64,000 nt of DNA. Source: Octopus bimaculoides. Lineage: Eukaryota. The notes beneath the pieces are model-generated. The model was not told the DNA's origin, ran no database searches, and worked only from the letters and a program-made list of their open reading frames with translations. The position numbers were made by a program, and so were the translations under genes. The stretch is taken from the NCBI RefSeq assembly GCF_001194135.2, contig NC_068990.1, forward strand, positions 78,419,356 to 78,483,355, in the 5' to 3' direction. Below, in pieces: positions 19,745-19,825 of this stretch (its first letter is position 1; every line of letters begins with the position of its first letter).

Positions 19745-19825
19745 CTATCGGTTTGCTCACTAGTCCTACTAAGTCCAGGGTAGTAGTAGTCTGCACGGTC
19801 TTCCTGATCATATTTGTCATCATCC
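19745..19825 (-). CDS. Candidate alternative cassette exon of the PTPN4-like gene (81 nt, DDDKYDQEDRADYYYPGLSRTSEQTDR)
   Basis: Acceptor cctttgcttgcttgtAG and donor AG|GTGAGC. Length is 27 codons, and phase 2-2 matches the host intron. It is stop-free only in the required frame context and lies in unique, non-repeat sequence. No transcript evidence is available. Confidence 0.5.

What the first reader, a model, noticed from the sequence alone, without database searches (positions are those of the whole stretch)
19745..19825. Probable 27-codon cassette exon inserting an acidic, triple-tyrosine peptide into the FERM F3 lobe
Seen: pyrimidine tract plus TAG acceptor, consensus AG|GTGAG donor, 81 nt, phase 2-2 matching the host intron, and no stop. 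It lies in unique sequence and has a GCAUG (RBFOX-type) motif just upstream of the acceptor. Splicing gives NTFSW-DDDKYDQEDRADYYYPGLSRTSEQTDR-AKIVKISF. Known: in PTPN4-type proteins as I recall them, W is followed directly by xKIVKISF. Inference: a regulated, possibly neural, lineage-specific isoform. The acidic-flanked tyrosines could be phosphosites in a tyrosine phosphatase, or the insert could alter F3 ligand binding.
Basis: partly seen in the sequence, partly recalled or inferred. Interest (0 to 1): 0.7.

Follow-up and report, generated by a model that had tools for sequence, protein, structure and literature searches.

The report
Candidate extra exon in FERM phosphatase
An 81-base stretch deep inside a 27-kb intron of a mollusc FERM-phosphatase gene looks as much like a coding exon as the gene's real exons do, but nothing available here shows that it is ever spliced into mRNA.

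Summary
On the minus strand, 19825-19745 is an 81-nt open segment. It has a pyrimidine tract plus TAG acceptor and an AG|GTGAGC donor, in phase 2-2. It lies in the 27.4-kb intron that splits ...NTFSW | AKIVKISF... in FERM lobe F3 of a PTPN3/4-like gene.

It is exon-like beyond chance. Its splice score ranks 3rd of 11 against the gene's 10 mapped exons. It is the best of 638 frame-preserving open AG..GT pairs in the intron. Only 4 of 300 Markov surrogate introns match it. A codon-position model trained on the real exons scores it above every real exon, and only in the required frame.

No direct evidence could be obtained. No similar peptide turned up, but those searches were weak for this purpose. 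All 148 homologues have exactly one residue between W and K. The orthologous introns of Lottia (267 nt) and Tegillarca (551 nt) show no trace of it.

My estimate is about 50% a real, lineage-specific exon encoding an acidic, tyrosine-rich loop in the F3 beta4-beta5 turn, and about 42% an unused pseudoexon. The neural/RBFOX reading is unsupported.

The parts
19745..19825 (-). Candidate 81-nt exon, phase 2-2. It encodes (W)DDDKYDQEDRADYYYPGLSRTSEQTDR(A). It is 60% purine and 46% G+C, against an intron mean of 34% G+C.
   Evidence: Searches give the sequence and translation. Searches give the splice-score rank and nulls. Searches give the coding-frame bias. One search gives the composition.
19826..19880 (-). 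3' splice region: pyrimidine tract ending in TAG at 19828-19826. CTAAC-type branch-point candidates lie about 30-55 nt upstream. GCATG is at 19854-19850.
   Evidence: One search gives the sequence. Acceptor score is 6.9, against a range of -1.0 to 12.3 for the real exons.
19738..19744 (-). 5' splice site: exon end GATAG followed by intronic gtgagc, with GT at 19744-19743.
   Evidence: Donor score is 10.2, second highest of 11.
19755..19760 (-). Second GTGAGC inside the exon, 16 nt upstream of the main donor. Using it would give a 65-nt frame-shifting exon and a stop in exon 9.
   Evidence: One search gives the sequence. One search gives the pair 19825-19761, splice score 13.4.
30455..30543 (-). 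It ends in phase 2.
2991..3054 (-).
3055..30454 (-). Host intron of 27,400 nt, phase 2. It is filled with microsatellites, mariner transposase fragments, a SINE-like repeat family and assembly gaps.
   Evidence: The orthologous introns are 267 nt in Lottia and 551 nt in Tegillarca.
20008..20057 (-). 50-nt CT-rich tract about 185-230 nt upstream of the acceptor. It could bind PTB-type proteins, but 23 such tracts occur on this strand of the window.
716..46085 (-). Mapped part of the host gene (FERM_N, FERM_M, FERM_C and FA). Exons: 46085-45972, 44143-44101, 41752-41677, 38435-38338, 35568-35448, 31676-31589, 30543-30455, 3054-2991, 2050-1890 and 784-716.

Best explanation
The segment is a genuine, lineage-specific coding exon of the PTPN3/4-type FERM phosphatase gene. 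It arose within a hugely expanded intron.

When included, it inserts a 27-residue loop between the invariant Trp that ends strand beta4 and the x-Lys that starts strand beta5 of FERM lobe F3. The loop is acidic (net charge about -5), rich in tyrosine and almost free of hydrophobic residues. Its two ends sit in a tight hairpin turn, so the F3 fold can be kept and the loop would protrude at one end of the beta5/alpha1 groove, where FERM F3 lobes bind peptide ligands.

Most likely effect (inferred): steric or electrostatic tuning of F3 ligand or membrane binding, possibly switched by tyrosine phosphorylation.

Shown: the anatomy, its exon-likeness against several nulls, and the position in the fold. 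Inferred: that it is spliced in at all, whether it is alternative or constitutive, and everything about function.
For: - Both splice sites are as strong as those of the gene's constitutive exons. Total score is 17.1, third of 11.
- Length and phase preserve the frame and there is no stop.
- It is the best of 638 frame-preserving open pairs in the intron.
- Only 4 of 300 Markov surrogate introns give one as good. The empirical estimate from both strands of the window is about 0.07.
- A codon-position model trained only on the 10 real exons gives 0.34 bits per codon in the required frame, against -0.04 and 0.03 in the other two frames. Real exons range from -0.11 to 0.25. Only 0.2% of open intronic 26-codon windows reach 0.34.
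- It tops all open AG..GT pairs on both strands. The gene-free plus strand peaks at 0.06.
- Only 1 of 26 residues is hydrophobic, which 1.5% of open windows match. Nine residues are acidic, which 0.3% match. This is what a surface loop in a hairpin would need.
- The insertion point is a 3-residue beta-turn in a confident part of the model.
- It is not part of the window's abundant repeat family.
Against: - There is no transcript or junction evidence.
- No similar peptide was found in short ORFs of the 5.8-billion word index or in 1.84 billion cluster representatives. Both searches are weak for an isoform-specific 27-mer.
- 148 of 148 homologues have no insert at this turn.
- There is no trace in the orthologous introns of Lottia and Tegillarca, so it would be young or restricted to one lineage. 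By general knowledge, such exons are usually included at low levels.
- Part of the period-3 signal, and the D and Y runs, come from trinucleotide micro-repeats.
- 24% of intronic windows of this length are open.
- The splice matrix is a generic one written from memory, not a model trained on this species.
Confidence: 0.5

Rival explanations
1. Pseudoexon. This is intronic DNA, partly decayed trinucleotide repeats, that by chance carries a good acceptor, a good donor and an open, frame-compatible reading. It is ignored by the spliceosome or used only at noise level. The only real product is NTFSW-AKIVKISF.
For: - Strong decoy site pairs do exist in this window: 24 pairs with a total score of at least 17 on both strands, most of them not exons.
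- Open windows are common, at 24%.
- No homologue has an insert at this site.
- The peptide has no relatives.
- Related molluscs have nothing comparable.
- The exon contains TAGG/TAGT motifs and an internal frame-shifting donor.
- The finding was picked as the best candidate in a long intron, which is a selection effect.
Against: - My rough estimate of the joint chance of strong sites, symmetric length, an open frame and this coding bias in the required frame is about 1e-3 per intron.
- No decoy on either strand combines these features.
- The hydrophilic composition suits a hairpin loop.
Confidence: 0.42
2. The segment is a real exon of something else, not a working coding part of the phosphatase. 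It could belong to a nested or overlapping transcript on the minus strand. It could be a captured exon fragment from another gene. Or it could serve mainly through its internal donor as a frame-shifting, decay-triggering 'poison' exon.
For: - Its coding-like periodicity exceeds that of the host's own exons, which could reflect origin from another coding sequence.
- A second GTGAGC donor 16 nt upstream would shift the frame.
Against: - No protein anywhere resembles the peptide and there is no Pfam match.
- No neighbouring exon-like partners were seen in the intron.
- The main donor is much stronger than the internal one, 10.2 against about 6.5.
Confidence: 0.05

Closest known systems
PTPN3/PTPN4 (Ptpmeg-type) FERM-PDZ-PTP phosphatases
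   Same: The host gene's FERM_N, FERM_M, FERM_C and FA regions match. The best named relatives are labelled PTPN4, at 66-76% identity, and the closest overall is a Lottia partial protein at 79%. The W-x-K-I-x-K-I-S-F hairpin is identical in spacing.
   Different: None of the retrieved family members has residues inserted between W and xK. The PDZ and phosphatase domains lie outside the window, so the full architecture is unseen. The best solved-structure match by sequence is FARP2 FERM, slightly ahead of PTPN3.
Alternative exons inside the FERM (30-kDa) domain of protein 4.1R/EPB41 (own knowledge, not checked here)
   Same: Frame-preserving cassette exons that change a FERM domain's binding properties.
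   Different: Those exons encode parts of the canonical fold and are conserved in vertebrates. This one would add a new loop with no counterpart in any homologue.
Unstructured loop inserts in the F1 lobes of the talin and kindlin FERM domains (own knowledge, not checked here)
   Same: A flexible loop of about 30 residues inserted into a FERM lobe without breaking the fold, which modulates membrane or ligand binding.
   Different: Those loops are constitutive, lie in F1 and are basic and lipid-binding. This one would be in F3, acidic, and encoded by its own exon.
Intronic pseudoexons (Sun and Chasin type decoys; own knowledge)
   Same: A sequence deep in an intron, bounded by good splice-site matches, with no known transcript.
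   Different: Typical decoys do not also keep the frame, stay open and show coding-type codon-position bias in the required frame.

Membership tests
PTPN3/PTPN4-type phosphatase (host gene) | N-terminal FERM domain (F1-F3) followed by an FA region | tested here: met
   Pfam FERM_N 4.8e-15, FERM_M 1.5e-29, FERM_C 1.5e-25 and FA 2.6e-11 on the spliced product.
PTPN3/PTPN4-type phosphatase (host gene) | Closest relatives are PTPN3/4 rather than band 4.1, FARP or ERM proteins | tested here: inconclusive
   Hits labelled PTPN4 are 66-76% identical, against about 47-50% for band 4.1. Among solved structures, FARP2 (4.5e-42) edges PTPN3 (2e-38). No PTPN4 FERM chain is among the PDB hits listed.
PTPN3/PTPN4-type phosphatase (host gene) | Central PDZ domain and C-terminal PTP catalytic domain | not testable with these tools
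   The window ends 715 nt after the FA exon. The rest of the gene is outside it.
Alternative cassette exon | Usable 3' and 5' splice sites, with a length and phase that preserve the frame | tested here: met
   acceptor 6.9, donor 10.2, 81 nt, phase 2-2, no stop.
Alternative cassette exon | Observed both included and skipped in mRNA | not testable with these tools
   No transcript data for the source lineage could be reached.
Alternative cassette exon | Frame and splice sites conserved in related species | tested here: not met
   This was tested only against distant molluscs. The orthologous introns of Lottia (267 nt) and Tegillarca (551 nt) have no similar sequence, with alignment scores at the shuffle mean. 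Close relatives could not be tested.
RBFOX-regulated exon | (U)GCAUG elements in the flanking introns, typically conserved, with downstream sites driving inclusion | tested here: inconclusive
   There is one AGCAUG 23 nt upstream of the AG and one GCAUG about 270 nt downstream. The background is 150 matches on both strands in 64 kb. Conservation is not testable.
Recursive-splicing (RS) exon of a long intron | The acceptor is followed at once by a reconstituted GT donor (AG|GTRAGT) | tested here: not met
   The exon starts tag|GGATGA, so no 5' splice site is regenerated at the junction.

The most novel reading that the evidence does not exclude
A lineage-specific exon gives a FERM-PDZ tyrosine phosphatase an acidic, triple-tyrosine loop at the mouth of the F3 ligand groove. 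The loop would work as a phosphorylation-dependent intramolecular switch. For example, it could act as a pseudo-substrate or docking site for the enzyme's own catalytic domain, or as a mask of F3 ligand or membrane binding. That would be a new way of regulating this phosphatase family, created from expanded intronic DNA.
Probability: 0.08. Interest if true: 0.6.

Novelty: new member of a known kind. Interest (0 to 1): 0.3.

Why it matters
If real, it would be the first insert seen in the otherwise invariant W-x-K hairpin of FERM lobe F3: none of the 148 homologues checked has one. It would also be a clean example of a new coding exon born in an intron that grew 50-100 fold relative to other molluscs. 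It would give a testable handle on how F3 binding, or the phosphatase itself, is regulated. If it is a pseudoexon, it is a useful warning case: a decoy that passes the splice-site, frame and coding-bias tests at once.

Tried and rejected
**Protein searches**
- A search with the spliced 78-aa and 202-aa products found only insert-free relatives. Hits never exceeded about 1.75 times the query length. Full-length annotated isoforms were therefore never seen, so these negatives are weak.
- The 43-aa genomic ORF shared no words with anything in the index. phmmer found no hit among 1.84 billion representatives.

- Exact-ORF look-ups of the cassette ORF, the exon-8 ORF and a 178-aa intronic ORF were all 'not on record'.

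**Other sequence searches**
- A degenerate DNA pattern for DRADYYYPGL found nothing in metagenome contigs.
- The Logan contig carrying the nearest intron-bearing exon-8 ORF (L001) ends 163 nt after the exon. It is only 75% identical in the exon.
- Rfam found nothing in the window.
- A literature search on PTPN4, FERM and alternative splicing listed ten papers; judging by titles and abstracts alone (none was opened), none concerns an F3 insert.

**Ideas rejected**
- Recursive-splice site: no regenerated GT.
- Origin from the window's abundant SINE-like repeat or from a transposon ORF: no match.
- The GCAUG as meaningful evidence: the background is too high.
- A 12-nt GATGACAAGTAT match in the Tegillarca intron: at chance level.

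Full report
**What is there**

The gene lies on the minus strand.
- The upstream exon ends ...NTFSW with TG|gtaagc at 30455, which is phase 2.
- The downstream exon starts at 3054 with G GCA AAA ATA GTG..., reading AKIVKISF.
- Between them lies a 27,400-nt intron.
- At 19825-19745 there is an 81-nt segment. It is preceded by catcctttgcttgcttgtag and followed by gtgagc. It is open in the frame imposed by the flanking exons and encodes DDDKYDQEDRADYYYPGLSRTSEQTDR.
- In genomic DNA the open frame is only 43 codons long and stops right at the donor.

**The host gene**

I used retrieved homologues and the Lottia gigantea partial protein P0041 as guides to map ten constitutive exons. They run from 46085 to 716. 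Their product carries Pfam FERM_N, FERM_M, FERM_C and FA.

The closest retrievable protein is from Lottia, 79% identical over 307 residues. Hits labelled PTPN4 are 66-76% identical and band 4.1 proteins about 47-50%. The PDZ and phosphatase domains lie outside the window. 'PTPN3/4-type' is therefore likely but not proven. Among solved structures, FARP2 slightly outscores PTPN3. I could confirm 'mollusc' but not 'cephalopod'.

**Is the exon-likeness more than chance?**

I scored splice sites with a rough, generic matrix written from general knowledge. It is not trained on this species.
- The candidate scores acceptor 6.9 and donor 10.2, total 17.1. That is third of eleven against the gene's ten real exons, which range from 5.2 to 20.0.
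- It ranks first of 638 frame-preserving, open AG..GT pairs in the intron, 5 bits ahead of the runner-up.
- Across both strands of the window, six pairs have both sites at least as good, and the candidate is the only open one.
- Counting symmetric, open decoys on both strands gives roughly 0.07 expected per intron.
- First-order Markov surrogates of the intron produce an equal or better candidate in 4 of 300 trials.

A second, partly independent test used a codon-position nucleotide model trained only on the ten real exons.
- It gives the candidate 0.34 bits per codon in the required frame, against -0.04 and 0.03 in the other two frames.
- Real exons, scored leave-one-out, range from -0.11 to 0.25.
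- Only 0.2% of open 26-codon windows in the intron reach 0.34.
- When all open AG..GT pairs of the window are ranked by this score, the candidate comes first. Real exons follow it, and the gene-free plus strand never exceeds 0.06.
- The peptide has one hydrophobic residue in 26, which 1.5% of open windows match. It has nine acidic residues, which 0.3% match.

Caveats:
- Open windows are common here, at 24%, because of microsatellites.
- Part of the period-3 signal comes from GAT GAT GAC and (ACT)3-4 micro-repeats.
- All these features were examined after the candidate had been picked as the best in its intron.

**Where the insert would sit**

All 148 retrieved FERM homologues that carry the motif have exactly one residue between the invariant Trp and the Lys of K-I-x-K-I-x-F. 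Solved PTPN3 and FARP2 agree.

An AlphaFold model of the Lottia FERM has a mean pLDDT of 77, rising to 84-91 in this part. It places W206|A207 in the three-residue turn between strands 199-205 and 209-215 of F3, ahead of the long C-terminal helix 242-260. Pfam FERM_C is split at profile position about 32/33.

From established structures of ERM and 4.1 FERM-peptide complexes (own knowledge), the strand after this turn and the helix form the ligand groove. A 27-residue hydrophilic loop there is sterically tolerable and would sit at one end of that groove. Function beyond this is inference.

**Comparative evidence**

The same intron, at the same position and phase, exists in Lottia (L002 9988-10254, 267 nt) and Tegillarca granosa (L003 27109-27659, 551 nt). 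Neither contains anything resembling the cassette. Local alignment scores equal the shuffle mean, and the best peptide matches are at chance.

Many other animals, apparently arthropods, have no intron here at all. The intron has therefore expanded 50-100 fold in the source lineage, through transposon fragments, a SINE-like family and microsatellites. If the exon is real, it is lineage-specific.

**Why there is no direct evidence**
- The peptide and its genomic ORF have no relatives in the word index or among 1.84 billion cluster representatives.
- Hits in the homologue searches never exceeded about 1.75 times the query length, and isoforms collapse into clusters. These negatives therefore say little about an isoform-specific 27-mer.
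- The source genome could not be found by exact-ORF look-ups.
- A degenerate DNA scan of metagenome contigs found nothing.

**Regulation**

GCATG occurs 150 times on both strands of the window. The single AGCAUG 23 nt upstream of the acceptor is therefore weak evidence. By the known position rule, an upstream RBFOX site would favour skipping, not neural inclusion.

CU-rich tracts flank the exon, but 23 such tracts occur on this strand. A second GTGAGC donor lies 16 nt inside the exon. Using it would give a 65-nt frame-shifting variant. The exon start does not regenerate a donor, so it is not a recursive-splice site.

**Verdict**

Set against that: there are no transcript data and no precedent for an insert at this turn. 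Distant molluscs lack it, part of its content is low-complexity, and it was picked as the best candidate in its intron.

I put about even odds (0.5) on a genuine lineage-specific exon, alternative or constitutive. I put 0.42 on an unused pseudoexon and 0.05 on an exon serving another transcript or a decay-triggering role. One RNA-seq alignment or one related genome would settle it.

Noticed in passing
window 3055-30454 (-); L002 9988-10254; L003 27109-27659: The phase-2 intron between W and AK is conserved in position in Lottia and Tegillarca. It is 267 nt and 551 nt there, against 27,400 nt here, a 50-100 fold expansion. Many homologous ORFs from other animals have no intron at this site.
   Followed up: yes
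window 13440-13780 and at least 12 other places (e.g. 26817-27133, 44898-45074, 8504-8630, 34467-34659, 45386-45591): A dispersed SINE-like repeat family of about 200-330 bp, in both orientations, at 74-94% identity. It populates the introns of the gene.
   Followed up: partly
window 15517-15807 (+) and 7307-7720 (+): Mariner-type transposase fragments (Pfam Transposase_1: 6e-14 for 15517-15807, above the curated cutoff; 4.5e-4, 20.5 bits, below the 24-bit cutoff for 7307-7720) inside the big intron. They are degenerate and not intact.
   Followed up: partly
window 1096-1034 (-): A second symmetric 63-nt open AG..GT pair (splice score 16.1) in the phase-2 intron between the 2050-1890 and 784-716 exons. 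In the frame compatible with its neighbours the coding score is about zero, so it looks like an ordinary decoy.
   Followed up: partly
window 19755-19760 (-): GTGAGC occurs twice, 16 nt apart (TAGTGAGC and TAGGTGAGC). The inner copy is a possible alternative donor that would shift the frame.
   Followed up: partly
window 9063-9365, 10523-10749, 20883-20972, 26807-26816, 63267-63566: Runs of N (assembly gaps), mostly next to (TA)n/(CA)n microsatellites. Four of the five lie inside the host intron, so its true length and content are not fully known.
   Followed up: no
window 42306-43082 (+): Two adjacent ORFs (136 and 113 aa) that look gag-like, the second with a C-x2-C-x4-H-x4-C motif. They lie in an upstream intron. 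There was no significant Pfam match.
   Followed up: partly
(tool behaviour): Hits of the homologue search never exceeded about 1.75 times the query length (134 aa for a 78-aa query, 354 aa for a 202-aa query). Full-length proteins and their isoforms were therefore invisible. Negative results for the insert should be read with this in mind.
   Followed up: partly
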